A stretch of DNA of 64,000 bases, from positions 68,294-132,293 of the forward strand of contig BFEA01000039.1 of the NCBI GenBank assembly GCA_003427395.1, read 5' to 3'. The notes beneath the pieces are model-generated. The model ran no database searches. It saw only the letters and a list, made by a program, of their open reading frames with translations, and was not told the origin of the DNA. The position numbers and the translations under genes were made by a program. Source of the stretch: Chara braunii. Lineage: Eukaryota > Plantae > Charophyceae. Below, one piece after another: positions 1 to 42,302 of the stretch (positions within the stretch are counted from its first letter, which is position 1; the number at the start of each line of letters is the position of its first letter).

Positions 1-265
1 CCGGTACTTATGCCGGCTCCCCGTACGGTACGAGGAGGAGGCTCGACCAGTTCTCTGCTGCTGTACTCGTACTCAGTGTGACTTGCCGTTTCGGCATTCG
101 GAATCCCAGACTTCGACTTTGTGCCTTGCCACTGTGTCTGCGTCCGACCCTCAGTCCGAGTCCGTCGTGTCGAGTGAGTGAGTGTGTGTGTGTGCTCTCA
201 CTCTCTCCCTCTCTCTCCCTCTCTCTCATCTCCCTCGGCTCACCCTCAGCCTCACGCTCGTTACA
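1..265 (+). mobile_element. 3' end (U5-like) of an LTR inserted into the L1 ORF2 fragment
   Basis: GT/CT microsatellite-rich tract ending ...CTCGTTACA exactly where L1 ORF2 homology stops (FFKNAF|). Only one end is in the window, so the TSD cannot be checked. Confidence 0.5.
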
Positions 266-1206
266 AAGGCATTCTTAAAGAACATTGAGACTGTGTCCCC
301 TATTGTGTGCCAGTTATCTTGCCAGAATTCTTTTGGTAGACCATCTCTGCCGGGTGTTTTGTTTGGTTGCATGCTCCTTAGGGCTTCGAAGAGCTCGTCC
401 TTGGTGATTTCTTTTTCCAGGTAGTCTATTGCTTCTTGTTTGAGGCTTTTGTCTAGATGTTTCAAAAATTTCTCTCTTGCTTTCCGCACGTTGCCGGGAT
501 TTTCCAAAAAGGTTTTGGAGGTGTAGAGATTTTGGTAGAATTCTAAGGCTACTTTTAGTATTCCTTTCTGGGAGGTCTGCAGGTTGCCTGATGAATCTTT
601 CAAGGCTAATATTTTGCTGTTTCTGTGGTTAGCTTTAATCCTTTGGAAGAAGAATTTTTTCATAGCCTCGTTACTTTCCCAATCTCTGACTCTGGCCCTT
701 ATGGCAAGTCCTCGCCTTCTCCACTCCGCCCAATGCCTCAATTCAGATCTTGCCTCCTCTAATAATTGTTCGTACAGGGGTGCTCCTGGATTGGCAATTA
801 GGTTGAATTTTGCGATCTCTACCATGGCTTCCAGTGTTTCCTGTCTTGCTTTCCTATTTTTGGCTTCTCTTCTTGAGAAGGAGCTTGCCCAATCACTTAC
901 CATACTGATAGCTGAAGGGAAGTCCCTTGAGATCTCTCCTTCCATCAGCTTTTCTGCTAGTTGCCCCCACTTGTCTTTGAATTCTTGTTTAAAGGAGTCT
1001 AATTTAAGGAGTGAAGTATTTAACTTAAAGAAGCTTTTCCCAGGGGTATTATCTACCGAAAAAGACAGGTTCAAGACAATTGGGTTGTGATCTATACCTA
1101 CGTAATGTGGTAACCTTCCTATAGAGCTATCTAGGATTGCCCCTTATAGGGATTCTGAGACGAGAAAAAAGTCTATTCTGGAGAATGAGGTTCTTCCCTG
1201 AGTTGA
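266..1206 (-). pseudogene. Host L1/Tx1 ORF2 fragment (end of APE endonuclease, linker, start of RT)
   Basis: Translates STQGRTSFSRIDFF...*...IDHNPIVLNLSF...FKLNTSLL...KTPGRDGLPKEFW, i.e. the APE C-terminal SRID/DH motifs and pre-RT motif; one in-frame stop. Confidence 0.9.
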
Positions 1207-1240
1207 TTTTTTTTATTTTTTTATTTTTTTATTTTTTTTT

Positions 1241-1356
1241 GAAGAAACTTCGAGAAGTCCTCGAGACCGTAAGCGGCATCCATGTCAATGCATACACATG
1301 TCTCGTCTTGAAGAAACTTCGAGAAGTCCTGGAGATCGCAAGCGGCATCCATGTCA
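1241..1356. repeat. 47-bp direct repeat with 69-bp period next to the poly(A) tail
   Basis: GAAGAAACTTCGAGAAGTCCT.GAGA.CG.AAGCGGCATCCATGTCA at 1241 and 1310. Confidence 0.9.
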
Positions 1357-1917
1357 CCTTCACTCAAGGCAGTCCTGGCATCCATAAGCCACAGAGAGTC
1401 GTTGGCGTGACATCAATCCGCAGGCATCAGCCCTTGGGTGCTTCGGACATTGAACAATCTTGAGGAAATAAAATAAAGGCTGAGAAAGTGAATAGCAGTT
1501 GGGGACATCTCTTCTCTAGAGAAGATTTTTTTTTCTGAGAGCAAAGGCAAGGTGCAACCGAAACTGGACACAGAGAGAGACCACCATACCTGCTCTACTT
1601 CCAGGACTGGACCGGGCGACCCCAGTGCACTGCACGCCATATCGCAAAACAGACCTGCACCACCAACTAGCCTGACATAATGTTTCAGCATTTGCTCTCC
1701 CCGCCTTAAAGCCTTGCTTCCTGATTGGAGTAATCGGACCTAGAGCACGGACCTAGAGCAAGGCCTCACTGATAANTGGTAGGACTTTATTAATAGGACT
1801 ACCATATACTGAAGGCAGGCAAGGTGCCAGCCCAGAGAGTGCATCTTGCACTGGCCAGTCGCTCCTAGCATCTTGTCTATCNGCTGAATTTTCACCTGTT
1901 TGCTCTGCAAAGTGGAG

Positions 1918-2051
1918 CCATCATGCTCTCAGTGAAACTGTGAAAAAGATTAACCATCATGCTCTCAGTAAAACTGTGAAAAAGATTAACCATCATGCTC
2001 TCAGTAAAACTGTGAAAAAGATTATCCATCATGCTCTCAGTAAAACTGTGA
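1918..2051. repeat. 36-bp minisatellite, ~3.7 copies
   Basis: CCATCATGCTCTCAGTAAAACTGTGAAAAAGATTAA repeated head-to-tail without spacers. Confidence 0.95.
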
Positions 2052-2607
2052 CATAGATGAAGTTCGACAAACTACCACGAGTGGCATGTCAACAGATTCA
2101 TGTCGGCGGAATCAGCGAGTGCAAAGTGGACATATGGACATTACAGAGTGTGATCTCGACACGCAACGTCAACAAAAGGAAAAGCTACAAAGCAAGTGGA
2201 GGAGGGTGGAGGGTGAGGGGGGTTAATGATGACAGGGCCAAGGGTGGGGGGGGGGGGGAGGGAAGAGCAACAACTTCACAGCCCTCCGACAGAAGTCTGT
2301 GGGCTTGAAGAACTCAGACAGAAGACGCTGACCATGGATCTAAGAAAGAAAAGGAAGGGGGGGGAAAGGGAAATCTGACTGCATAACCTCACACGTACAA
2401 AAAAAAAAGGTGTCAGAATGTGGGATGAAGATGGAAAGTGGTCCCCTCATCACTACCCCCAGGGCAATAAGCTAATAACTGGAAATGGTGCAATCCAATC
2501 AATGCTGAAAGGGTGGCAGCATGAAGGTTACTTGAGATCAGCTACTGCTGAGTTTTCCACTCCGAGGCAGTGCCGGACAGAAGTACATTCCGCCTTCCTG
2601 TGTCGCT

Positions 2608-3282
2608 TCACCAGTAGTTCAACGCACCCTCATCAGCACCCTCGGCTTTCACCACTTCAGCGCTACATCCCGAGATGGACTTCGCTTCATCAGAGCGTAA
2701 GTGAACAAACTTTTGCATTGCCTGATAGAAAGGATCCCTCAATGTGTAGCAAGGATCGATCACATGCGACGACCTCCTTGTCGCAAACGGTGGTAAGCAC
2801 GATTCATCCATTACCTTCAACAATTCATCATGACCATTTCCATGCAACACTTTCACTTTGTGCCTTGTGCGTTCCTGCAAAAGGTTTTTCACCACCTTCC
2901 AGCATGTCGAGAAGACATACGGCGTATTAACAATGTAGTATGTGTCTGTCTTCTCTGGATAGTTCAGATCATCAATTGATGCGATGGCCGTAACAATCTT
3001 CAGCTTTGATAGGGCTGACATCTTTAGTCCCGGCGTATCGAGAACTTTTATGCACGAAACGATGGGTCTACCCATCCTCGCCGAGGCTTCAGGCAGAATG
3101 ACCCTGTCTCCATACTCGTTCAACTGAATGTGTGCAGCCACGTGCTCCTCCACCGTTGCCCCCACAAAGTCCGAGAGACCAAGAGCATAAGCAAATATAG
3201 GTCTTCTCTTGTTGCAGTATCCTCTGAAAGCGATGAGGCTACCATGGCGAACCCTCTTCAGAACATCCTCCGTCAGGTCCCA
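2608..3282 (-). pseudogene. Intronless (processed) copy of the C-terminal part of a plant SEC14/CRAL-TRIO lipid-transfer protein
   Basis: Open frame HIQLNEYGDRVILPEASARMGRPIVSCIKVLDTPGLKMSALSKLKIVTAIASIDDLNYPEKTDTYYIVNTPYVFSTCWKVVKNLLQERTRHKVKVL matches the plant SEC14 CRAL-TRIO motif series. The N-terminus is replaced by L1 3' UTR. Confidence 0.9.
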
Positions 3283-3604
3283 GCTTCCTTCCGTCTGGCC
3301 GAAGGAACCCTGACCAGCATTGATTGCTCCTTCTTGGGAGGATTGACTGTCAGCTTGCCCTACTCTCGTTTTCCTCTCAGAAGCCCTGTTGCTTCTGTCG
3401 AATAGTCGATAAAGCACAAGAAACTGGGAGAGATGTCTGTCCGTCTGAGACTAGCGCCCCATTTTGTCCTCCTCGGGATTGACTTCCTTGTCGTTGTTGG
3501 ATTGGGCCCCTTCTTCCAAACTGACCCCTCGACTGTCTTGCTTGTCACCCTGCTTTTGTAATGTTCCTCCTTCATGGATCCATCGGAGTTCCGTGTCTCT
3601 GAGG

Positions 3605-6600
3605 CTACGCCTGCTGCCACCTCTTCCATATCAACCTGTTGTCCGCTAAGGTGGCGATCTTGCCCTTTAACAGCCAGTTCCTCAGGAATGTTCTTCTTTC
3701 GATCGCGTGCCTTTCTGGTCTGTGCGTCCTAGGTGAGGATATTTTCCGCCACCTGGCCTGAATTTCGGTCTCCACCATGCTTATCAGAAGAGTCCACATT
3801 TCCTCCCTTGACACCTCTGCTCCTTCGATTGTCCGTGTGCATCTGCGTTTCCAGATGACCCAGAGGGCTAGTTTTCTGAGTAGATTGAACCAGACTTCCT
3901 TGCTGCCACTGAGATTCCTGGGAGTGTTAGATAGGAGTAGGATTGTTAGAGGGGGGGTGTTTGGGGGTGGAGATGAAAAGAGGGTGGACCAAAGGTGCCA
4001 AACTTTGTTCCAGATCCAATTTGCTTCAAGACAGTAGAGGAGGCAGTGAGGGATGTCTTCTGCTGTGTTGTTGTTGCACAAGACGCAGAGTTCTGAGCTT
4101 TCTGGGTCTGAGTGTTTCCTTCTTTTCTGGAGCCATTGGCTGACCGGGAGGGCTGCGTGTGCTATGAGCCATTGCATGCTGCGGATTCTGACTGGCCTAA
4201 TAAGGAGGTATCTGTTCCAGGGAATGGTGAACGGGGTCGAGGGGTCTAGATTCAGGATGTTTTGCCACTTCTCTTTTAGCCCAGGGTTCGGGTCCGTAGT
4301 CTGCAACCCGAGGTCGTAGCCGAATTTCACGTCGTATTCGGAAATTGTTCTTGATTTCCTTCCGGCGCCTTGATTCCATCTCCATTCTTTAGGATCGAAT
4401 TCCAAGTCCTCAATGCTGAGTTCTGGCTGGAATATGACCCATGGTCGGTTCTGGGGGACTCTGACCTTTCTAAGAAGGAAGGTTTCTAGTTTCTCTGCTT
4501 GAGGGGCCTCGTTCTGGATTTCCAGTTCCTGTAGACTGTGTTTTGAGATGGGGTAAGATAAGAAACTGGCTCGGTAGCTGGGGGAGTCTGATCTAGAGAT
4601 AAAGCGATAGGCTCTCTCGGGCGGCGTCTGGGAGACTAGTAGGCCCCATTCTCCTGATTTCCACGTCAATTTTTCTCTTAGGAGAGATATCCATTGAGTG
4701 GGGATGCTCTGATGTATCGCTGCTAGATTAGCTTCCAACGAGTGGCATCCCCTAAGGGAGGTTCGGAGCTCTTGGCACGTCATCCAGTCTCCTCGATCTG
4801 CAGACCATAAATGCTTGATCTGCCATACTCCTCTCTCCACCCAGGTCAGCCACTTATGGTCTTTCGCACGGAGGGTCCAAGGATTACCTTCTGCATCTTT
4901 TATCCACGGGTTGCTGAAGAGAGGTTGTCTGAGGACTTCCTCTTTGTTGTTCGGCGCACCAAATTTGTTGGGCATCAGTCGACGCCACGCTTTCAGGGTC
5001 GGCATCCAGTAGGGGTTGGGTGAGGGGGTAGGCTGGCTGGTCTGCTGTTGCTGTACTCTCCTTGCTGTCCTCACTGTTTTGATTGACCACTCTTTGGCCA
5101 TGATCCAGAAGAAGCCCTGCATGTTGGGGGGAGATTTAACTGGTGCCAGGTTTCTTATGTTGTCTAGGGCCATTTTCGTCCAGGGGAGAAATTGTTTCGT
5201 TAGGATCTTGATAATCCATTTCATCTGGAGGGCGATTGCTTCCTGTTTTGGGTCTATAATGCCCAGGCCTCCTTCTTGCGGTTTTCTAGTGACTATTTGC
5301 CATGCGACCTTGTTTATGCACGTGGTCCTGTTAGGGTCCCCTGTCCACAAGAAGCACCTGACCCTGGTCTTCAGAGTCTTGAGGTCGTCGTCAGGGGGGG
5401 ACCAAATGGAAGCCAAATACCAAAGGGTAGAGAATATTGTCGTGTTTATGATTAGTGCTCTTCCGAACAGGGATGCTTGGGCTTTCTTACACGGGGCGAG
5501 GCGAGCTATTGCCTTTGCTATTAAACTTTGTCCCATCCCCGGCCATGTACCGACCTTGTTGACCATGATACCCAAGTACCGGAGTGCCTGGTCGCCCGTG
5601 GACCATGACATGGGAGTGGATGGGTCCGGAGGTTGAGGGGGGGTGCCCTCTGCTAACCACCAGCCTTCAGTTTTAAGCCAGTTCACCTTCATTTCTGATG
5701 CGAGCCGAAAGGCCTCCATGGCTCTAACGAGGGCCTGAAAGGAGGAGTTATTCGCCCTGATGAGGACCGTGAGGTTGTCCGCGAACACCAGCGCAGCGGG
5801 GAGAGAAAAGTCATGTAGGGGGTTGTATTTCTGTTCCGTGAGGCGATCTATCGAGGGGTCCTTACGAAGGAACGAAGCTATGTCTTCCATGATGAACAGG
5901 AAAATAGGGGGGGCGAGTGGGTCACCCTCGCGTACGGACCTCGATATCAGATAGGAGTCGGATAGTATTCTGTAAATCTGGACTCTTCCGGTGGCGTTGC
6001 CATAAAGAATTTTGACCCATTCCCTGAAATTCGGACCAACTCCCATCTTCTCCATGCAGTTATGGAGGAAATCCCAATTAACTTGATCGTAGGCTTTTTC
6101 GAAATCGAAGAACAAGATCGTAGCCTGCATTCGTTTTTCGGTGATCTTCTTTGCTGCTTCATTCAGGGTCATCACGTTGTCTAAGATGTATCTCCCCGGA
6201 ATGAAACCTGCTTGGTCGATATGAAAGCATTTATCAGTCAGTTTTATTATCCTGTTGGCTAATGCTTTCGCCAAGATTTTATAAGGAGTTGTGAGTAACG
6301 AGATCGGTCTGTAATTCCTTAGATCCTCTCTGTCCCCTTTCTTGTGGATTAGGGAGACCACGCTGGTACTAAGGAATTGGCCCAACCCTCCCTTCGTCTT
6401 GCTGTCATTGATAAAATTAAGGAGGTCGCTCCCCATTGTAGGCCAAAAATGGATCCAGAACTCCTTCGAGAGACCGTCAATCCCTGGAGCTTTGTCGTTC
6501 CCCATTTGAGTTAAAGTTGTATGTAGCTCCCTTAGGGTGATTGGTTTGTCTAGGGCTTCCGTTTGCTCCGACGTTATCGTTCTGTCCAGGTAAGACATCA

Positions 6601-7056
6601 TATGTTGGCGAGCTATTAGGTTCGTTGTGGGGGGGGGGGAGGGTGTCTTGGACTCGTAGAGGTCTGAGTAGAAGGACCTGGCTATCCTTACCATATCTGT
6701 GCCAGAAGATTTCACTTTCCCTTGGTCTGTTGGGTCCTTCAATCTCTCGATCATACTGTTTCTCGCGTTTGCTTTAATCTTGGAGAAGAAGAACTTGGAC
6801 ATAGATTCATTAAGGGTGTAGTCAGTCATCCTGGCGCGTGGTTGCAAGCCTCTTAGTTCCCACCTCCTCCATTCGTTGAGTTCCTCCTCGGCAAATCTTA
6901 GTAGGTCGTGATAGAAATCGTTCGTAGGATCTGATGTAAGATTAGCTTCAGCGACTGCTATAGCAATTTGAAGTTCCTCTTTTCTAACTTTGCGCTCAGC
7001 CGCTATGCTTCTTGATTCTGCGGATACAGTCTGGGACAAGTCCGTGTAGCTGTCTA
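3605..7056 (-). pseudogene. 5'-truncated L1/Tx1 ORF2 (reverse transcriptase and C-terminal CCHC), open but catalytically mutated
   Basis: 1144-aa ORF with KAPGIDG, NYRPISLL, QAGFIPGR, FFDFEKAYD, REGDPLAP, FADN (catalytic DD changed to DN), RYLG and CVLC...H...C. The endonuclease domain is absent. Confidence 0.95.
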
Positions 7057-7625
7057 CCCTGAGTTGATTTTTTAATGCATGTATAGTCTTTTTTTCCTGG
7101 GTTAAGGATCCTGTATGGGTCTATGAGGTTATGTTCCGTTGTTATCTGGGCAAGTTTCCCTATAGCCGGATCTTGCGAGGTTTCTTCTGCCCAAGATATT
7201 CTGTCTAACTGTGGGTTCTGCGTGGTGTTCCAGTCCCCTACTATTATTGTGTGCTTATGGGGGTGAATGTGGTTCTCAATTTCCTCAAGGAATGATAGCC
7301 TTTCTGCTGAAGAGTTGGGGGCATACACATTGATTATTGTGCATTCCTCCCCTCTGAGTGTGATCTCTAGTTTGTTCCATCTCCCTCCTACACTGTCTGA
7401 TGTTGCCGCGTTTAACTTTATTAGCTGGGCTGTCATTGCCTTGTTGTGTACTATTGACATTACTCCTGCGGAGGACGGTGCAGGACTGTATGTGGACACT
7501 GTAGTTGCACAGGTTTTTAGTCTCCTTATGATTTCTCTCTCCGCTGCTTTATGAGCTGGTGGATGAGCAAAACGTCTGGGGGATTAGGTCCATTCCACCC
7601 TGTCACATTTAAGAAGCAATGCCAT
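7057..7625 (-). pseudogene. Host L1 ORF2 N-terminal APE endonuclease (continues at 1206)
   Basis: INVYAPN, IIVGDWN, LIDPYRILNP...YT motifs; frameshifted near the start. Confidence 0.9.
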
Positions 7626-7748: not shown

Positions 7749-8635
7749 TTACGTGGAAGAGCTGCTTTCTGCCACTTCATCCAGTGGAACGAGCAGGGCA
7801 GGTAAGTCTTTTTCTTCATGCAGGAGGACTTCTGATTTCGCCAATGTAGCTAATGCTGCTGCATTGTGTGTCATTACTGTTTCGCTGCCCAATGCTGTGA
7901 TTGGTAAGGATGCCATCCACCACCAGGGCTTCCATTCCATGTCCCCGGGCAGCTCCGCTTCCTGCTTGAGACAGACCAGCAGTGGTCTTGCATCGTAGCA
8001 TGTCTGATCCTTTTTACCAGAGTCTCCTATGTTTTCCCTCTTCCTTATCTCTCCTTCCCCTGAAACTTCCCCCGCCAGCCCGAAAAATTTTGGCTCCTTC
8101 CCTTTGTTGATCCTCTTCAGAACGTCTTCTCGGAATTACTGCTCTTGACGGCAAGAGGGTGGTTGCTTCCTTTCCTGCTCTTTCCCAGAAATTTTCCTGC
8201 TGCTTGCCCCACAGATCCGCTGCTGCTACTGTGCGAAGTGCAAGTTCCTTGTTCAGGTCAGCCAGTCTGCCGCATTGTGCATGTAGAGTCTGCGCTTGGA
8301 TGCCCAATTGTGTTATGGTTGCTGGCTCTTTGCTCTGATCTTCCTGAGCATTTTGTGTCTCTTTGTCATTTAGAGGAAAAGTCGGCTTGTACTTCGGCAG
8401 ATTTTTCCTCTTCTCCTTAGCTTTTTCTTCCTGCGTTGCATTGGTCCCGTCTATCTCCATGCTCTGGTCATCTTTGACTGCACAGTACTTCTCTGCAAAG
8501 AAGGCCGCGAGGTCGTCCTCCCTTTCCAGTGGTGCAAAAGGGTTTTCTGATAGTGGAATGAGCTGAGCCGGGGTTGTTGCTGCATCTTTCTGTCTGTTCT
8601 TCTGTTCGGGCTGTGCCTTCATAATCCTCATGACA
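7749..8635 (-). pseudogene. Host L1 ORF1 remnant, probably 5'-truncated
   Basis: Broken charged/coiled-coil ORFs (8014-8652, 7749-7940) immediately upstream of the endonuclease on the same strand; includes the SENPFAPL motif common in L1 ORF1. Confidence 0.55.
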
Positions 8636-11826: not shown

Positions 11827-12070
11827 CTCATTCTTTATCCGCCGTTCCTCCATTTCTTCAGCACGCTTGCCTTTGCAAAGGACGATTGCTGCCTCCATCT
11901 GACTCTCCAAGAACTGTTTCATCCTATCAGCGTCAAGGATATCATCACATAGGCACTTAAGCAGTGCAAGATGGCTCTCACAATCCAACTCCCAATAATT
12001 AACACAACCCAGCTTCTGCACTGCCTGCTTCACAGGCTTACACAGCTGGTTGTAGCCCCTTATAAAATAC
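11827..12070 (-). CDS. Exon of PHD-DDT-WHIM1 chromatin protein: WHIM1 region
   Basis: CTGCAG|...GAG|GTAAGA boundaries; YWELDCESHLALLKCLCDDILDADRMKQFLE is a WHIM1-type motif; phase matches the preceding exon. Confidence 0.8.
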
Positions 12071-12244
12071 CTGCAGAAACAAAAGCACCCCTGTTGAACA
12101 TATCACTACAAGGAATGATGAACGCACTAGTTCTGGCAGTCCCAAACACTCAATGTACATTTGTATCTATATTCACTTGTGGAAAATTAGTAAATTACTA
12201 CGGAAGGCCAAACAAAAAAACAGCGCATGTCGCAGGAAACATAC

Positions 12245-12783
12245 CTCCTAACTAGCTCTGGCCATGTCGTCGAGTCAAGAAGCCGTGCCCAGCGAGCAAG
12301 GGTCTCTTCACTCACACCTGCTCCCTCCCGACCACCGGGGTTCTGCCCGGCTCCAATGTCAAGCAATGCCCTAAGAAGACTCACATACAGATCCCCCAAA
12401 ATATGGCTTCTGCTAGAAATGCTGACTGCAGTCATGAATTGAACAAGGCCCGGCTGTGGGCACTTCAGCTTCTTTCCAACACCTTGGCAGAAGTCCCACA
12501 CTTCCAGCATAGTCCCAAACAACCAAGGTGTCAACTTTCCAGGACCAAAGGCACTAGCTATGAGAAGCCGCTCTACAGGCCGCGGCTTCGGACACTGCTG
12601 TTTAACTGAGGCTAGGCAAGGGGCACCCTCTATGCCTGATGCAGCCTCATTTGCTTCTTCTTCATCCTGTAGCTCCAGATCCTCCACGGGATATTGCCAG
12701 TTCCTCCGTTTTGCCATCATCCTTTCTTTCCTTCTCCTCTCCCGCTCCTCCACACGGTGCCTGAACTTCTCTTCCCGGTCTTC
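12245..12783 (-). CDS. Exon of PHD-DDT-WHIM1 chromatin protein: DDT domain
   Basis: TTACAG|GAA...AG|GTATGT boundaries; YPVEDLEL...FGTMLEVWDFC...F..AV...ILGDLYVSLLRALL...LDSTTWPELVR is a DDT signature. Confidence 0.85.
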
Positions 12784-13062
12784 CTGTAACGGCACAGTCA
12801 TTTGCAAATAGCAAGGTGTTATCACTGTTATGTGCCTGATTCAGGCTGATTGAAAACAAATCCAGCATTCACACGTTCCCATACACATGGGCAATCACAA
12901 GTAGACTTGGAGAGAGCAATGCACACCAATCCAGATTATGAGAATACACAGCGAAGGCTCACAAATCCCAAACACAGCATTGATTTCAATCAACTCTTAG
13001 TGATACCGTTTCCCCCAGGGTTGCATACCTGCCAACCGCCGACTGTTTTGCAGCCGACCAGA

Positions 13063-15496: not shown

Positions 15497-17070
15497 GTGG
15501 AAGTGGTCATGAAGGTGGAAGGTGCACAATCTTCTACCTCCACTCCTACTACCCCTCTGACTGCTACTCAGCGGCGAAAGAAGGAGATCCAGGAAAGATT
15601 GCAGCAGGAACAGGCCCTGCTTGACGAAGTGGAGAGACAGGAGGCAGCCGAGCTAGAGGCTGCAACAGATGCTTCACGAAAGGAGTATCTGTTGGAGCAG
15701 CTTGGCAAGGCTGTGTCTGATGACCACTGCTCCCAGGTGAATAAGAACTTGGCGGAGTGGGCTCTTCTGGAGCACAAGACCACGACTTCTTATTTCACTA
15801 ACTGGGATGACCGTATAGGTCGTCTGGAGCGCAGGGTGGATGACCTGGCAGCTCAGCAGTCCAAGATCCTGACAGCAATCCAGGATCTAACTGCTCAGCT
15901 GAAAGCAGCCAAACTGATCGTTCCCTTGTCTCCTGTTCTCTTAGCAAAACCCAAACCTTCCTCCTCTCCCTCTTCAACCCCCTCTGTTTCACGCCATTCT
16001 TCCCTTCACCACCTCTTTCCCAAAAAGCTACAGCCCGACCATCTTATGCATCTGTTGCTGTAGGAAACCAGAGAGGTCCCAAGATCCCATCTTCCAACAA
16101 GTTCAGAGGGGATGACCAAAAGACTGATGTTGGGGGCTGGGCTGTTGGGACCCGAGCCTACTTGAGGGGCGTCTGTGCAGAGCAGACTAAGGTGGCCACG
16201 ATTCTGGGACTGCTGGAGGGACCCGCTCTGAAGTGGGCGACCTCAACTTCCAGCAGTCAGCAGCAGTCTATGGAAGACTGGGCTTTTGGGATGGGGGTGG
16301 ACAAACTTTTGCAGGCCCTAGAGGACCGCTTTGCGGACGAGGAGCGGGCCCGCAAAGCTGCTCACAAGATTGCTCGCTTGGGGCAGCAGCGCTACAACGG
16401 TACCCTGCAATCCTTGTTTGCAGAGTGCGAGCAGCTTACCTCTACCCCTGGGTTGGTCATGTCCACTGATGATTTGCTGACCAACTTCTGCAGGGCAACG
16501 CCTGAGGAGTTTGTCGTTGCTTTGTACAGCGCTGAGCACAAGGACTGGAGATCCTTTGGCCGCGCAGCCCTGGACATGGAGGCCAAACTTCATGTTTAGG
16601 CCCCCTCCTCTGATAGGAGGAAAGGTGCCTTCCCTCATGGTGGTATAAAGGGAAAGGCAGCCTTCACACATGCAGGATCTGCGTCAGCTTCTGATTCAGA
16701 TTCCCAGGCTGATACACCATCAGCTGGGACTGGACCAGCTGCTGAAACACATGTTGCAGCGGCCCTGACTCAGGCTGTTTTGGGAGTTCTGCAGCAGCAG
16801 AAGAAGTTTTCCCCCACCACAGCCTCAGCCAGTGCAAAGGGGAAGGACAAAGGACGTCGACCTTCCTCTTCCCAGCGCCCTAATCTGCCCAAAGACGTCC
16901 ATATGCCAGCAGACCCTCTCAATCCCTCCACTCTCCCCTGGCATGACCTCAAGATCCCGGAGGGAGTGTGGAGAAGAAGAAAGGAACGAGGGGTCTGCCT
17001 GAGATGTGAGGGACAACACTTTTTGAAGGACTGCCCTTACATGCCAGGCCCAGGACAGTCAAAAAATTGA
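15497..17070 (+). pseudogene. gag: gag (coiled coil, retrotransposon capsid, CX2CX3HX4C knuckle), disrupted
   Basis: LLEGPALKW...ALEDRF capsid motif; CLRCEGQHFLKDC; split over three ORFs by a frameshift and a stop. Confidence 0.85.
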
Positions 17071-20000
17071 AGCAAACCCTGGGGACTGCAGTTCCCCCCA
17101 GTGCTGCATCTTCATCTGCCCAGGTAGGTGAACCTGCAGCTGTTTCAGTTGAGACTGATTGTGTGAGTTTGGGGACTGCACGGGCAGCATCCTTCTGCTA
17201 TGAGGATCCTGACCCGGATCAGGACCCGGGGCAGGATGAGCTTCAGTCACTTGCTGCTTTCTTCCTTCATCTGAAGGAACAAAAGAAAAGCAAGTCTGAT
17301 CTCATCCTACTTCGGTCCTTGATCAACCACAGCAGGATCAAAGGGTTGTTGGATTGTGGAGCCACCAAAAACTTCATATCTCCCTGTGCTGTTAAGAAAC
17401 TGCATCTGGGGATGAAAGTTCAACAGTTGCAGCAACCTTTGCTGGTCGGAATAGGTGACTCCACAGTGCTCACCATCAGGGAGAAAGTCAAGGGTATCCC
17501 TGTGACTTTCGATAGTGCTGGCGAAGTCAGACATAGTCTGAACTTCTACATATTCCTTGACCTACCCTTTGACCTGGTGTTTTCTATGCAGTGGTTGAGG
17601 GCAGTCAACCCTAGGATCGACTGGCAGATTCCTAGAGTTGAACTATCAAACAGCCAGGGGGTGTATCAGCCATGCATGATAGTTGCTGATCATCACCCTA
17701 AGACCTCCTGCTACTGCTTACGAGCGAGGGAGTTCCATGCCCTCTCACGCCAATACCACCATGAGCGTCTATTTATTGCTCTGGTCAAGCAAACAGATGC
17801 TCCTCCTGTCACCTGTCCTCCTGAGATACAGCAGGTGGTCGATCAGGGTTACCTAACCGGCCAACCAAACATCGGATTGAGCTACTACCTGGGGCGGTCC
17901 CTCCGAAGGGCCGCGTCTACAGGATGTCCCCTGCTGAGCTTGAGGAGCTAAAAAAGCAGCTTGAGACCCTTACCAGCAGGGGCTGGATCAGGCCTAGCAC
18001 TTCTGAATTTGGTGCACCAGTTCACTTTGTGCCGAAAGGGAACGTCGAGTTCAGAATGTGCATTGACTACAGGGGTCTCAACAAGATCACTAGGAAGAGT
18101 ACAGAGCCACTTCCTAGGATCGATGACCTTCTGGATATGGTGCAGGGCTGCACAGTGTTCAGCAAAGTCGACCTCAAATCTGGGTACCACCAGATTGAGA
18201 AGGCCGAGGAGGACGTCTACAAGACAGCCTTCAAGACCAGGTATGGTACTTACGAGTTTCTGGTCATGCCATTTGGACTTTGCAATGCCCCAGGTACCTT
18301 CCAGACAGAGATGCACCGCATCTTCAGGCCTTACCTAGACAAGTTCATGGTTGTCTACCTGGATGACATCCTGGTATTCAGCAGAACTGCCAAGGAACAT
18401 GCGGAGCGCTTGGCTTTGGTCCTTCAGTCGTTACGTGACAGCCAGTACAAGATCAACAGAGAGAAATCCTCCTTTGGAGTTCCCTCTGTCATCTACCTGG
18501 GTCATGTAATCTCTGGAGATGGCCTGGCTCCTGAAGCAGCCAAGATAGTTGTTATTCAGGAGTGGCCTCAGCCTCAGACAGTGAGGGATGTCAGGTCCTT
18601 CATGGGTCTAGCCTCCTACTACAGAAAGTTTGTCAGAAACTTTTCTGCAGTGGCTGCACCCCTGACCAACCTAACAAAGAAGGACACTCCTTTTCTTTGG
18701 TCCCTCCACTGTCAGCTGGCCTTCACACGACTCAAGAAGGCCTTGACTTGTGCACCTGTGCTGAAGTTGCCTGACCCCACTCTGCCATTCATCCTAACCA
18801 CTGACGCTAGTCGGTATGGCATTGGGGCAGTTCTTCAGCAGGATGATGGGAATGGGCCTGTAGAGTTTATGAGTAAGAATATCAAAACTCAAAAGCTTCA
18901 GGACTCCACCTACGAGAAAAAGTTATATGCTCTTGCCTGTGCCCTGAAACATAGGAAGCACTTTCTCCTGGGAAGACACTTGAAGATCTTCTCAGATCAC
19001 TCCACCCTACAGTGGATGAAGTCCCAAGGAGAGCTGAACAATAAGTTGGCACGGTACATTCAGTTCATAGACATGTTCGACTTTGAACTGAAACATAAGA
19101 AGGGCTACTACAACAAGGTAGCAGATGCCCTCTCTCGTAGGCCTGACTCTTTTGCAGTGATCTCCTCTACTCACTCCTTTGGAGAGGAGACCCGTCAGAC
19201 CATTGCTCATCTACTGCCTCAGGACCCGACTTTCAGACCCATAGTCAGGAACCTGCAAGCAGATCCTAACTCTAAACCAGGCTATGCTCCGAGTTCAGAT
19301 CTGCTATATACCTACAGCAGAGGGGAGGAGCGCCTGTGCATTCCCCAGGATCAGCGGCTCAGGACACTACTGATGTCAGAGGACACTACTAATGTCAGAG
19401 TGTCATGATGCCCGTGGACATTTTGGGTTCCTAAAGTCATATGCAGCCCTGTCGCAACGCTTCTTCTGGAGGGAGATGCGGAGTGATATGCTGCGCTATG
19501 TGGAAACCTGCGAACTCTGCCAAAGGAATAAGGTCCAGCGTAAGCCTCCTCTGGGACTGCTCAAACCCTTACCCATACCTGATGGCCCTGCTGAATCTGT
19601 GTCTATAGACTTCACAGATTTAGGCAAGACCACTCCTTGTGGCATGCGTCAGGTTATGGTCTGCGTTGACAGGTTCTCCAAATACGCAGAGTTCATCCCC
19701 TTGCCAGAAGTAGCTAGAGTTTCGGCTGTGAGAGCAGCCTTTTCAGAGAGGTGGGTCACACACCATGGACCGCCCACTTCTATAGTCAGTGATCGAGACC
19801 CCATATTTTGCAGCGATGAGTGGCAGTCCTACTGTAAGAACCATCTACACTCACGATTGGACATGACTTCTGGTCATCATCCTGAAGCCAATGGTCTGGC
19901 TGAAGTGATGAACCAAGTCTTATTCCAATTGTTGCGTCCTGTCATCTCTCCAGATCAGCGGACTGGGATCTTCACTTGGCTCGAGCACAGCTTGTGTATA

Positions 20001-20678
20001 ACATGTCTGTCCGTCCTCGACTGGGTTCAGTCCATACAGATTGCACTGGGGACGTGAGCCACGACATCCTCTCAATGATATCATCGATAAGGCTAAGTCT
20101 GATCTGACTCCAGGCACCGCAGAGTTTATCAGACGCTACCGCATAGATGTGGAAAAAGCACGGGGGAACTTGTTCAAAGCCCAAAAGGCGATGATTGAAC
20201 AAGCTAATCGCCACAGGCGGCCTTCCCCCATCCGCACTGGTGATCATGTTTGGGTAGCCAGTTTTGAGTTGTCGAGGGAGGAGGATATCTCCCCCAAGTT
20301 GTTGCCTCGTTACCTGGGTCCATGGCAGGTCTTAGATACAGTGGGCGCTGATCCATTCAGTCCATCCTATGTCATCGACGTCCCGTCTTCCATGCATCTA
20401 AACTGCTTCCCTTCACTCCAGCTGATGCATTCCCAGACCGGCCCCCTCAGTTTGGTCCACTGATCCCTGGCAAGGGATATGACGTGGAATGGATTGAGGA
20501 TGAGTGGGGCACAGGCCCCGATCGACAGTATCTTGTGAGGTTCGCATTCCGGCCTCCTTATGAGAACAGATGGTTCTACAGAAGGGAACTTCTCAAGACA
20601 GCAAAGTCAGTTGTTTTACGATATGAAGCGGCTCAGAAGGGGAACCTTCCTCGCCGTTCACCTCGTCTTCATCCCTAG
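17067..20678 (+). pseudogene. pol: pol: aspartic protease, RT, RNase H, integrase, chromodomain; frameshifted
   Basis: LLDCGAT; RMCIDYRGLN, VMPFGL, YLDDIL; TDAS..GIGAVL; H..GH...C..C, SIDF, IVSDRD, NGLAE; KLLPRYLGPW; QYLVRF...ENRW. A 19-bp duplication (19362-19399) causes one frameshift. Confidence 0.95.
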
Positions 20679-36984: not shown

Positions 36985-38419
36985 AGGAGGTTCTGCTTTG
37001 AAAAAAAAAAAAAAAAAAAAAACACTGAGCTGAATGACCGCCCATGATACCTGGCGAGGGCCTGTGCCATGAACCCCCCCATAATACCAGTGGCGCTATT
37101 GCTTGAGACGCCTAACAAGACACTCTTCGAGCCCCCTTTCAGAAGGACAGGCTGGCATAACAAAAAGCGCATAATTGCCTATAGATAATTATGACAAGGC
37201 ATGACCAATCGGACAGTAGTAAACAACTCCACCATAAGCAAAAGGCATCTACGCATTATTCTGGGACAGAGTGTAAGCAAATTCCACTGCATCAGGCACG
37301 CCACAACACAAGGGTACTCGGGTTGAAGAGCCATGCAATGGGCGACCATCTCCCACAGCTCGGAGGGCAAGCGGAGGAGAGGCATTTTACTATTACTCAA
37401 AAGCAAAGGAATGTTCAAAACACAGGTGCACACACAATCAACCAAGGCATACCCTAGATAGCCAAACAGGACGATCGATACATGCATGCCACAGATTGGA
37501 CGAGAGAAGAGAAAGGGCAAGGGGTTGTGATGCTGAGGGCAAGGCAGGTTCTGCAGACTACACTGCAACGCAAAAGTTGTAGTAGACTCATGTCTTACCG
37601 GTTTTGAAAATGTTTTTTCCTCCTTGGAAAGAGGCCGTTTCATTATTGTTCCATTCCAGTTGCATGGCCGCTCCTCTGCTGATGAGCTATCTTCATCAAT
37701 GTTGATAGGCATTTGTCGGCTTCCAATATCACCAGGTCGTATAGGACCCATCTTCCCATTCCCAATTTCTCTCCCCACTGGCCTTGGGGGAGGCACTGCC
37801 ATGTTCCGTGGCTGTTTCCCTGGTGGTTCCTCCACTATGATAATTGTGCCATCTCCCTTTGCGACCAAACGCCTCTCAGTTCCTCCTCCTCCGTGGCCCA
37901 TCCTCGAGGGCTAGCTGTGGAAGCCCTCCCCGTAATGACTTCTATTCCTGATGCATGGCTGCCTATCCAACCCACAATGACACCAGCGAATTTGGTATTA
38001 GAGATGAGAAGAGCTGGACTTGACAGTAAGCACACAGCCAATAAGTTATGCCCAGTGTTACAGCCTTCTTTGCCAAACACAGTATGCACTTAAAAATTAA
38101 AACCACCACTACCTCCAACTGAGTCCAACAGACTTCGGAAAGGCCAGGTACTGACGACGTTTCTGGCAGCCCCAGAGGGGAAGATCAGTTTGAGAGGAGG
38201 CTTATACATTTGTCATTCCAAAGGGCCTCCACTGTTGATTGCTGTTTGCAGCCTGCCTGCCACCACACTTATACTGGGCCTATTGCACCCATCCATTATT
38301 GCCACTCTGGAAGACAGGAGACCCTCCCAGGTAGTGGTAATTTAAGAAAGCGAAAGGCACCTTGTCAAGACAAGAGCAAGGAAACAGAGACAGGTTCCCA
38401 CCTCCTCAGTCATTCACGG

Positions 38420-41830: not shown

Positions 41831-42073
41831 TCAAAAGGTCTACCGCGAAACTTATCCGATCAAAAAGGTTACGTGAGCCCTAGGCCCATGATTCAGAGCA
41901 TGTGACTTACTTGGGAAACTGTTTGACTAATTTGGTATTTTCACCCGTCCGAATGGTATGTGTACACTGTACAGTCTGAAATCGGTTGATTGCTGGATGA
42001 AATCGGTTTTGGCAATACAAATTTGTTTACATCATGTTCCCTAACGCTATCAAGCGTCTAAATTATTAAATCT

Positions 42074-42302
42074 TTTTCTTTTTTTTTCTTTTTTTTTCTT
42101 TTTTTTTTTGCAAAAAAATAGGGCCGAATGGTCCTGGCTCCATATCCATTCTGGGGAGCGTCAGTCCGGTTCCTTTGCCACCGGCAAGTCATGGATTACA
42201 GCAACATAAATACACACGCTTCCTTCCATCTGGCCGAAGGAACCCTGAACAGCATTGATTGCTCCACCGCATGATACCTGATGAAGTGGACATACATTCG
42301 TC
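42074..42302 (-). mobile_element. Short 5'-truncated L1 3' end with poly(A)
   Basis: T-rich tail followed by sequence matching 36484-36640 and 3283-3330; probable TSD TAAATCT. Confidence 0.8.

What the first reader, a model, noticed from the sequence alone, without database searches (positions are those of the whole stretch)
1196..7073. L1 carrying a processed host SEC14 gene retrotransposed as one 5.85-kb unit
Seen: one insertion bounded by the TSD CCCTGAGTTGA(T6) and a poly(A) tail. In sense order it holds L1 ORF2, L1 3' UTR, an uninterrupted ~225-codon SEC14/CRAL-TRIO segment with its stop, and ~1.4 kb of downstream sequence. Excising it restores the endonuclease frame of the older L1 it landed in. 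Known: L1 3' transduction moves host exons in mammals and is much less documented in plant lineages. Inferred: a donor L1 inside a SEC14 gene produced a chimeric mRNA ending at the host polyadenylation site, or an L1 subfamily has stably captured SEC14. The cargo frame is still open.
Basis: partly seen in the sequence, partly recalled or inferred. Interest (0 to 1): 0.85.

Follow-up and report, generated by a model that had tools for sequence, protein, structure and literature searches.

The report
L1 spliced to SEC14 exons, retrocopied
In the alga Chara braunii, the RNA of an L1 retrotransposon was most likely spliced onto the last exons of a SEC14 lipid-transfer gene and the hybrid RNA was copied back into the genome as one piece, which is a clean natural example of a known way retrotransposons move host exons rather than a new kind of system.

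Summary
A 5,844-bp minus-strand insertion (7056 to 1213) sits between exact 17-bp target-site duplications, at a TTTTTT/AA endonuclease site, inside the endonuclease domain of an older L1. It carries a 5'-truncated L1 ORF2, 322 nt of L1 3' UTR, 224 SEC14/CRAL-TRIO codons with their stop, a 1.37-kb 3' UTR and an A-tail.

New here:
- The genome is Chara braunii.
- The L1 part stops at the end of a conserved LINE tail module. Every other tail examined continues there with GTG, a splice-donor-like sequence, then about 110 nt more and its own A-tail.
- The SEC14 part starts at a phase-0 intron position shared by the moss and rice orthologues.
- RNA-seq shows a highly expressed SEC14 mRNA collinear with the cargo from 3281 to about 1247. 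Upstream of 3281 it continues into a different exon.

So the unit is most likely a splice-generated L1-SEC14 chimeric RNA that was retrotransposed, not a read-through 3' transduction. DNA depth fits two SEC14 loci (parent plus this copy), not a SEC14-carrying subfamily. The copy lacks a start codon and the N-terminal domain, and no copy-specific RNA was seen. The parental locus could not be retrieved, so its introns and a cis source L1 remain inferred. A note on this window had already flagged the donor.

The parts
7057..7073 (-). Upstream target-site duplication (in element orientation), 17 bp
   Evidence: Exact repeat of 1196-1212 (D5). The next plus-strand bases, AA, complete a TTTTTT/AA L1 endonuclease site.
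3605..7056 (-). 5'-truncated L1-clade ORF2. It starts just after the endonuclease domain. The ORF at 7039-3605 is 1144 codons, open, and ends in TAG.
   Evidence: RVT_1 at 2e-29 and zf-RVT at 1.5e-06, with no endonuclease domain. The best database relatives are Chara braunii RT proteins at 47-49% identity. Residues 5-213 align to the older L1 downstream of its endonuclease. DNA depth of 100-1000 at 90% likeness or more shows a multi-copy family.
3283..3604 (-). Retained part of the L1 3' UTR. It ends with the conserved LINE tail modules: about 3400-3331, then the hairpin plus pseudoknot module at 3330-3283.
   Evidence: 3283-3330 is 96% identical to 42218-42265. DNA word depth in that bin is 26,105, and 47 DNA contigs diverge at 3283. 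Five other tails align through ...GGAAGGAAGC and then continue with GTG.
3282..3283 (-). L1/SEC14 joint. The L1 side ends where the family has a GT donor-like site. The SEC14 side starts at a conserved phase-0 intron position.
   Evidence: Position 3282 is T in the copy and C (of a CpG) in the mRNA.
2608..3282 (-). SEC14/CRAL-TRIO coding segment of 224 codons plus a stop. It corresponds to moss SFH11 residues from about 76 to the C-terminus.
   Evidence: CRAL_TRIO at 4.6e-16. Identity to plant SFH proteins is 50-55%, starting right after the joint. It is collinear with RNA contigs and raw reads at about 98-99%. None of the five moss introns of this region is present.
1241..2607 (-). SEC14 3' UTR, including 36-bp tandem repeats at 1909-2052 and a 69-bp-spaced repeat at 1239-1356
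   Evidence: RNA contigs from two studies and oligo-dT raw reads cover it without a break down to 1247, all on one strand.
1213..1240 (-). A-tail of the chimeric RNA (A9 T A7 T A7 T A2), abutting the A6 of the duplication
1196..1212 (-). Downstream target-site duplication, 17 bp
226..1195 (-). Older, decayed L1 that received the insertion: the part 3' of the insertion point, holding the end of the endonuclease domain and the start of the RT region
   Evidence: The frame is restored on excision. It shares 40% amino-acid identity with the inserted ORF2.
7074..7499 (-). Older L1: the endonuclease domain 5' of the insertion point
   Evidence: Exo_endo_phos_2 at 9.4e-06.

Best explanation
This is a splice-generated L1-SEC14 chimeric retrocopy. 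An L1-clade LINE RNA of Chara braunii was joined by the spliceosome to the acceptor of the SEC14 exon that follows the conserved 'intron 4' position. The donor was the GT that directly follows the conserved pseudoknot module in its 3' tail (...GGAAGC|GTG...). The remaining SEC14 introns were removed and the RNA was polyadenylated at the SEC14 site.

Because the hybrid RNA still encoded ORF2, the reverse transcriptase could act on it in cis. It primed on the SEC14 poly(A) tail at a TTTTTT/AA nick inside an older L1 and copied the RNA back to a point just past the endonuclease domain (5' truncation). That left 17-bp target-site duplications.

The joint was most likely made in cis, from an L1 lying in sense orientation in that SEC14 intron. 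I put cis against trans-splicing at roughly 2:1. The product is a dead-on-arrival, single-copy pseudogene fragment.

Shown: the anatomy, the insertion hallmarks, collinearity with the mRNA, and both sides of the joint lying at splice-site positions. Inferred: the splicing itself, the introns of the Chara parent, and the location of the source L1.
For: 1. Insertion hallmarks: exact 17-bp duplications, a TTTTTT/AA nick site, an A-tail and 5' truncation.

2. The L1 side of the joint. In 115 kb of this locus, 5 of 5 other LINE tails continue after ...GGAAGGAAGC with GTG (GTGTGT, GTGGGA, GTGTGG, GTGAGT, GTGGGT). They then run about 110 nt further through a second conserved module to their own A-tail. 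The consensus of 47 DNA contigs and of the RNA contigs that leave at 3283 reads GTGAGTG on the sense strand. The insert alone departs at that point.

3. The SEC14 side of the joint. The cargo's first codon aligns to moss SFH11 K76 and rice SFH2 R75. Both are the first codon after a phase-0 GT..AG intron. The Chara mRNA reads ...TTGCAG|CGGGACC there, a typical exon end.

4. Collinearity with the mRNA. A 2,173-nt contig (X5), contigs of X18 and oligo-dT raw reads (X21, depth 54-148, one strand only) match 3281 down to 1247 without skips. In X21, 62 raw reads leave at 3281 into one and the same upstream sequence. The moss orthologue has five introns inside the homologous region, and none is present here.

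5. No internal A-tract and no L1 terminal module, so read-through cannot explain the joint.

6. Precedent: splice-made mRNA/L1 chimeras are documented in primates (PMC13174262).
Against: - The parental SEC14 locus was not retrievable. No Chara SEC14 protein other than the chimeric model P0167 is in the databases. Its intron at the joint and an L1 inside it are therefore inferred from moss and rice only.
- The joint is not a perfect splice product. Position 3282 is T where the mRNA has C. This needs one C>T change at a CpG.
- The closest tail (GTGGGA) shares GGGA with the SEC14 exon start. A microhomology-guided template switch plus a 1-nt deletion would give the same letters.
- The -1 base of the putative donor is C, which is not consensus.
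- No chimeric L1-SEC14 RNA is visible today. Depth at 3339-3537 is 1.3 against 69 on the cargo.
- U6/LINE chimeras noted elsewhere in this genome show that template switching does occur here (unchecked notes).
Confidence: 0.8

Rival explanations
1. Template-switch chimera. An L1 reverse transcriptase began on the poly(A) tail of a mature SEC14 mRNA in trans. It stopped inside the mRNA and jumped, guided by GGGA microhomology, to an internal site of an L1 RNA, which it then copied.
For: There is 4-nt microhomology (GGGA) between the closest L1 tail (...AAGCGTGGGAG) and the SEC14 mRNA (...CAGCGGGACC). Chimeric U6/LINE retrocopies are reported by other readers in this genome (unchecked).
Against: - The break in SEC14 would fall by chance within 1-5 nt of an ancestral exon boundary. 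That is about 1.6% for 9 junctions on a roughly 2.9-kb mRNA.
- The break in L1 would fall by chance at the family's conserved GT.
- It needs an extra 1-nt deletion to match the letters.
- Jumps usually land on RNA 3' ends, not 110 nt inside.
Confidence: 0.1
2. A stable L1 subfamily has captured SEC14 as a third module and is propagating it. This is only one of several copies with the same joint.
For: ORF2 is open over 1144 codons and the cargo frame is open.
Against: - Allele-specific DNA word depth is about 6-9 for the copy's letters and about 6-9 for the mRNA's letters. It is 12.5-17.8 where the two are identical, which fits two loci in total (places 1517, 2281, 2486-2565).
- The L1 part has depth 100-1000.
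- The chimera lacks the endonuclease, ORF1 and the conserved terminal tail module.
- No second copy lies in 115 kb.
Confidence: 0.03
3. Classical read-through 3' transduction of genomic flank, or a DNA-level deletion that fused an L1 to a pre-existing processed SEC14 pseudogene before the pair moved.
For: The order L1 then host sequence then terminal A-tail inside one duplication pair is that of a 3' transduction.
Against: Defining marks are missing: there is no complete L1 tail, no internal A-tract and no source-locus duplication (criteria in PMC4859970). The cargo follows mature mRNA, not a genomic flank.
Confidence: 0.03
4. Assembly artefact: the short-read scaffold joined an L1 and SEC14-derived sequence across the high-copy 48-nt module.
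For: The module is very high-copy (depth 26,105). The assembly is gap-rich, with 1,458 N in the window. No single listed contig spans the unit.
Against: - A matching duplication pair, endonuclease site and A-tail around the exact unit would not arise from a misjoin.
- The DNA run carries copy-specific letters across the cargo at single-locus depth.
- The flanks rejoin into one reading frame.
Confidence: 0.02

Closest known systems
Splice-generated mRNA/LINE-1 chimeric insertions in primates, made by cis- or trans-splicing and then retrotransposition (PMC13174262, Cell Genomics 2026)
   Same: A host-gene RNA and an L1 RNA are joined at splice sites. The hybrid keeps ORF2 and is inserted by target-primed reverse transcription. 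An intronic L1 or trans-splicing is proposed as the source.
   Different: There the host exons are 5' of L1 (host donor to L1 acceptor, a 5' transduction). Here L1 is 5' and supplies the donor, while the host supplies the 3' exons, the 3' UTR and the poly(A) site. The host is a streptophyte alga.
L1 3' transduction and L1-mediated exon shuffling (Moran et al. 1999; Goodier et al. 2000; reviewed in PMC4859970)
   Same: L1 carries downstream host sequence to a new site. The unit ends in the host-derived poly(A) and is flanked by one duplication pair.
   Different: The canonical form keeps the full L1 3' end with its own A-tract and carries unspliced genomic flank. Here the L1 tail is cut at a GT and the cargo is spliced mRNA.
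SVA exon-trapping and transduction (Hancks et al. 2009, cited in PMC4859970)
   Same: Splice sites inside a retroelement create element-exon hybrid RNAs that are then retrotransposed.
   Different: SVA is non-autonomous and mostly acquires upstream exons. Here the element is an autonomous-type LINE with ORF2 in cis.
Template-switch chimeric retrocopies of the U6/L1 type
   Same: Two RNAs are fused in one duplication-flanked, A-tailed insertion.
   Different: Those joints lie at RNA ends or at arbitrary points and are not tied to splice sites. The initiating template is usually the LINE, not the mRNA.

Membership tests
L1-type insertion by target-primed reverse transcription | Target-site duplication flanking the whole unit | tested here: met
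   17 of 17 identical, at 1196-1212 and 7057-7073.
L1-type insertion by target-primed reverse transcription | Endonuclease nick consensus TTTT/AA and a 3' A-tail | tested here: met
   TTTTTT/AA at the empty site and a 28-nt A-rich tail.
L1-type insertion by target-primed reverse transcription | LINE reverse transcriptase encoded in the unit | tested here: met
   RVT_1 at 2e-29 and zf-RVT. The unit is 5'-truncated and lacks the endonuclease and ORF1.
Canonical read-through L1 3' transduction | Complete L1 3' end with its own A-tract retained upstream of the cargo | tested here: not met
   The tail stops about 110 nt short of the family's end, with no terminal module and no internal A-run.
Canonical read-through L1 3' transduction | Cargo is the contiguous genomic flank of the source element | tested here: inconclusive
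   The cargo is collinear with mature mRNA and lacks the five introns of the moss orthologue. The Chara source locus was not obtained.
Splice-generated LINE/mRNA chimera | The LINE side of the joint ends exactly before a GT in the element's own sequence | tested here: met
   5 of 5 neighbouring tails continue with GTG, and the consensus of 47 DNA contigs reads GTGAGTG after the module. The source copy itself was not seen.
Splice-generated LINE/mRNA chimera | The host side of the joint starts exactly at an exon start | tested here: met
   It is homologous to a phase-0 intron in moss SFH11 (E75|K76) and rice SFH2 (E74|R75), both GT..AG. The Chara mRNA switches sequence at 3281/3282 after ...CAG. 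The intron in the Chara gene itself was not observed.
Splice-generated LINE/mRNA chimera | The cargo follows the mature mRNA to its poly(A) site | tested here: met
   RNA contigs and oligo-dT reads are continuous from 3281 to 1247. The only skip is a 3-read minor isoform.
Splice-generated LINE/mRNA chimera | A source LINE in sense orientation in the intron upstream of the captured exon (cis model) | not testable with these tools
   No whole-genome search of C. braunii was available, and the parental protein is absent from the databases.
Template-switch chimeric retrocopy | A joint unrelated to splice sites, often with microhomology | tested here: inconclusive
   GGGA microhomology exists with the closest tail. 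However, both breakpoints sit at splice-site positions, and one extra deletion is needed.
Functional SEC14/SFH gene | CRAL_TRIO_N plus CRAL_TRIO domains with a start codon, and expression | tested here: not met
   Only CRAL_TRIO is present. There is no ATG before ORF residue 114. RNA at diagnostic sites is 98-100% parental.

The most novel reading that the evidence does not exclude
The GT that follows the conserved pseudoknot module of Chara LINE tails may be a working splice donor carried by thousands of elements. If so, intronic LINEs would routinely splice into downstream host exons and retrocopy them, giving a systematic exon-shuffling route in a streptophyte alga.

In this instance the captured CRAL-TRIO block sits in sense orientation in a 16-kb intron of a DDT/WSD chromatin gene. 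The GenBank gene model already splices it in frame into that gene. If even a low level of that splicing is real, this would be exon shuffling caught in the act.

The event also shows that a Chara L1 can insert an RNA that lacks the conserved terminal tail module.
Probability: 0.12. Interest if true: 0.7.

Novelty: new variant of a known kind. Interest (0 to 1): 0.45.

Why it matters
It is a well-documented natural case in which a LINE supplied the splice donor, captured the 3' exons of a host gene and retrocopied them. This is the mirror image of the exon-to-L1 chimeras catalogued in primates, and it comes from a lineage, Charophyceae, where LINE-mediated gene movement is essentially undescribed.

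It gives two testable points about Chara LINEs. First, their conserved tail carries a donor-like GT. Second, the terminal conserved module is not indispensable for insertion when ORF2 is on the same RNA and a poly(A) tail is present.

It also flags a probably spurious DDT-CRAL_TRIO-WSD fusion protein in the public annotation. As biology it remains a single, apparently dead-on-arrival copy.

Tried and rejected
- Search for the parental SEC14 gene. I ran two word-index protein searches (lengths 148-470 and 254-808 aa) and one exhaustive profile-free search. They found only land-plant SFH proteins at 56% identity or less, plus the chimeric model P0167 from this very locus. No parental protein was found, so there is no parental locus and no direct intron map.
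- No second SEC14 segment lies in the window or in the 91-kb locus L003.
- Closer copies of this L1 family. The best annotated proteins are only 47-49% identical. L003 holds a 76%-identical partial copy without its 3' end. The donor GT was therefore judged from five tails of related families and from contig consensus, not from the source copy.
Of the differences listed, 4 codons are synonymous and 2 are non-synonymous. About four further differences in 2812-3281 were not shown.
- The DNA contig 2566-2841 carries parental letters across a predicted exon junction. I do not count it as evidence against introns, because Logan contigs pop bubbles and mix the two loci. Its end at 2841 is what a branch at 2815|2814 would give.
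- The minor RNA isoform skipping 2814 to 2722 is only weak support for an exon junction there. The skipped piece has its own GT..AG.
- Literature searches found no report of LINE-mediated exon capture in Chara or other plants.


Full report
**What is there**

On the minus strand, a unit runs from 7056 down to 1213. It is bounded by the exact 17-bp repeat CCCTGAGTTGATTTTTT at 1196-1212 and 7057-7073. It ends in a 28-nt A-rich tail. The plus-strand nick site reads TTTTTT/AA, the L1 endonuclease consensus.

Deleting 1213-7073 joins the flanks into one frame that reads through an APE-type endonuclease motif (...SFSRIDFF...). This belongs to an older L1 that also carries Exo_endo_phos_2 at 7499-6996. 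That element is decayed, with a stop five codons after the motif.

The insertion itself holds, in sense order:
- an open 1144-codon ORF2 (7039-3605) with RVT_1 and zf-RVT but no endonuclease or ORF1, so it is 5'-truncated;
- 322 nt of L1 3' UTR (3604-3283);
- 224 SEC14/CRAL-TRIO codons and a stop (3282-2608; CRAL_TRIO at 4.6e-16);
- 1,367 nt of further sequence (2607-1241).

**Organism and context**

The reverse complement of the window is identical to GenBank contig BFEA01000039.1 of the Chara braunii assembly GCA_003427395.1. The closest ORF2 proteins are from C. braunii.

The nested L1s lie in sense orientation in an intron of about 16 kb in a large minus-strand gene. That gene has a DDT domain (12187-12825) and a WSD domain.

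**Where the L1 part ends**

A self-comparison found that 3283-3330 is 96% identical to 42218-42265 and to nothing else around it. This is the hairpin-plus-pseudoknot module that other readers of this scan noted at the 3' ends of many Chara LINE families. I used those notes only as leads.

In the DNA run, this 48-nt piece has a word depth of 26,105, and 47 contigs diverge from the window at 3283.

The window plus the extra 51 kb of locus L003 hold five other tails. All align through ...GGAAGGAAGC and then continue with GTG (GTGTGT, GTGGGA, GTGTGG, GTGAGT, GTGGGT). They run on through about 35 variable bases and a second conserved module of about 75 nt to their own A-tail. The consensus of the diverging DNA and RNA contigs is GTGAGTG.

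The insert alone leaves the family sequence at that point and has neither the terminal module nor an internal A-tract. The L1 part therefore ends immediately before a conserved, splice-donor-like GT.

**Where the SEC14 part starts**

Similarity to plant SFH proteins (50-55% identity) begins within five residues of the joint.

I mapped the exons of moss SFH11 by aligning its transcript contig to its gene. This gave nine GT/GC..AG introns, one of them between E75 and K76 in phase 0. Rice SFH2 has a phase-0 GT..AG intron at the same place, between E74 and R75. In the protein alignment, the first cargo codon (3282-3280) is the homologue of K76 and R75.

Five further moss introns fall inside the region homologous to the cargo, at window 3208|3207, 3154|3153, 3094|3093, 2896|2895 and 2815|2814. 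The cargo is uninterrupted at all of them.

**RNA and DNA reads**

Contigs of two putative RNA studies and raw reads of an oligo-dT RNA-seq run cover 3281 down to 1247 without a break. Raw-read depth is 54-148, on one strand only. Coverage of the L1 ORF2 is essentially nil.

A 2,173-nt contig matches 2026-3281 and carries 910 further bases upstream. In the raw-read run, 62 reads leave the window at 3281 into one identical sequence, also seen in the contigs of both other runs. On the sense strand that sequence ends ...TTGCAG before CGGGACC. In frame it reads KEGVDNVLQ|RDLTEDV, homologous to the moss and rice exon end.

So an abundant, mature SEC14 mRNA has the structure of the cargo, shares its 3' end to within about 14 nt of the A-tail, and has a different exon upstream of the joint.

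The mRNA differs from the copy by about 1-1.5% in the coding part and 3-5% in the UTR. Part of the UTR difference lies in G-runs and clustered changes.

In the DNA run, the copy's letters and the mRNA's letters each have a depth of about 6-9: 6.2 of 12.7, 9.27 of 16.4 and 8.64 of 17.8. Identical stretches have 12.5-17.8. This fits two loci, a parent and this copy. Depth is only a rough guide.

At diagnostic coding sites the RNA is parental in 98/99, 111/111, 81/81 and 89/89 reads. The copy is therefore not detectably expressed, and no chimeric L1-SEC14 RNA is visible (depth 1.3 at 3339-3537).

**Mechanism**

Both breakpoints sit at splice-site positions. The cargo is mature mRNA, and the L1 tail is cut short. 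The simplest account is a hybrid RNA made by splicing from the tail GT to the acceptor of the next SEC14 exon, which was then polyadenylated at the SEC14 site and reverse-transcribed by the ORF2 protein it encodes.

The letters at the joint, ...AAGC T GGGACC, differ from the ideal product, ...AAGC C GGGACC, by one C>T change at a CpG.

Cis-splicing from an L1 in that intron is the most economical version. Trans-splicing, as proposed for many primate mRNA/L1 chimeras (PMC13174262), cannot be excluded without the parental locus.

**Rivals**

- *Template switching.* This gains some support from GGGA microhomology with the closest tail (GTGGGA) and from U6/LINE chimeras noted elsewhere in this genome. 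It needs a 1-nt deletion. It also makes it a coincidence that the SEC14 break lies within a few bases of an ancestral exon boundary, about 1.6% by my estimate.
- *Classical read-through 3' transduction.* It fails its defining marks: two A-tracts, a full L1 end and a genomic flank (PMC4859970).
- *A SEC14-carrying subfamily.* It is contradicted by the two-locus depth.
- *Misassembly.* It cannot produce a matching duplication pair, endonuclease site and A-tail, and the DNA run holds copy-specific letters.

**Limits**

The Chara parental gene was not found by three protein searches. The only 100% hit, P0167, is a gene model of this very locus. The parent's introns, and any L1 inside it, are therefore inferred. 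dN/dS could not be computed. Of the differences shown, four codons are synonymous and two are not. The donor activity of the tail GT is untested.

**Comparison and verdict**

The event belongs with L1-mediated exon movement and with splice-made L1/mRNA chimeras, both known from mammals. It differs in three ways. The LINE supplies the donor and the host supplies the 3' exons and poly(A) site. The donor lies at the edge of a conserved structured tail module. And it occurred in a charophyte alga, where I found no such report.

It is real and neatly explained, but it is a single, dead-on-arrival copy. I rate it a new variant of a known kind, of moderate interest.

Noticed in passing
window 2611-3387 (-), with exons at 8392-8604, 11827-12786 and 37599-37751; protein P0167: The GenBank gene model for this locus is 1077 aa, with DDT, CRAL_TRIO and WSD hits. 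It uses the retrocopied SEC14 ORF plus about 35 codons of L1 3' UTR as an in-frame internal exon of the host chromatin gene. RNA at diagnostic sites is 98-100% parental, so the fusion protein is probably an annotation artefact caused by multi-mapped SEC14 reads. Low-level exonisation is not excluded.
   Followed up: partly
window 42058-42265 (-); L003 54904-55182 (-), 80072-80349 (+), 89556-89835 (-), 53768-54051 (+): LINE tails of families whose ORF2 proteins are only 37-64% identical share a three-part conserved 3' end: an upstream hairpin region, a hairpin-plus-pseudoknot module ending GGAAGC, then GTG, a variable spacer and a terminal module of about 75 nt before the A-tail. The SEC14 chimera was inserted without the terminal module. 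That module is therefore not strictly required when ORF2 is in cis and a poly(A) tail is present.
   Followed up: partly
window 2722-2814 (-): A minor SEC14 mRNA isoform (3 raw reads, with matching contig breaks in a second RNA run) skips 93 nt with GT..AG ends. It starts exactly at the position of moss intron 9 (2815|2814).
   Followed up: partly
window 1548-1746: A stretch inside the SEC14 3' UTR has a DNA word depth of 384, against about 14 around it. RNA contigs branch at 1717 and 1748. It is probably a small repeat embedded in the UTR.
   Followed up: no
window 17067-20463 (+): LTR-retrotransposon pol region with RVT_1, RT_RNaseH, Integrase_H2C2 and rve, in several frames. Similar flanking blocks around N-gaps at 13.2-13.9 kb and 21.0-21.7 kb may be its LTRs.
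   Followed up: partly
window 7053-7056 vs 1192-1195: The four bases before each duplication copy read TCTA and TCTT. This small microhomology at the 5' joint is typical of 5'-truncated L1 insertions.
   Followed up: no
L003 65102-66894 (-): The closest relative of the inserted L1 seen here has 76% nucleotide identity and 81-84% amino-acid identity over ORF2 residues 1-592. It lacks its 3' half, so it could not show the family's own tail.
   Followed up: no
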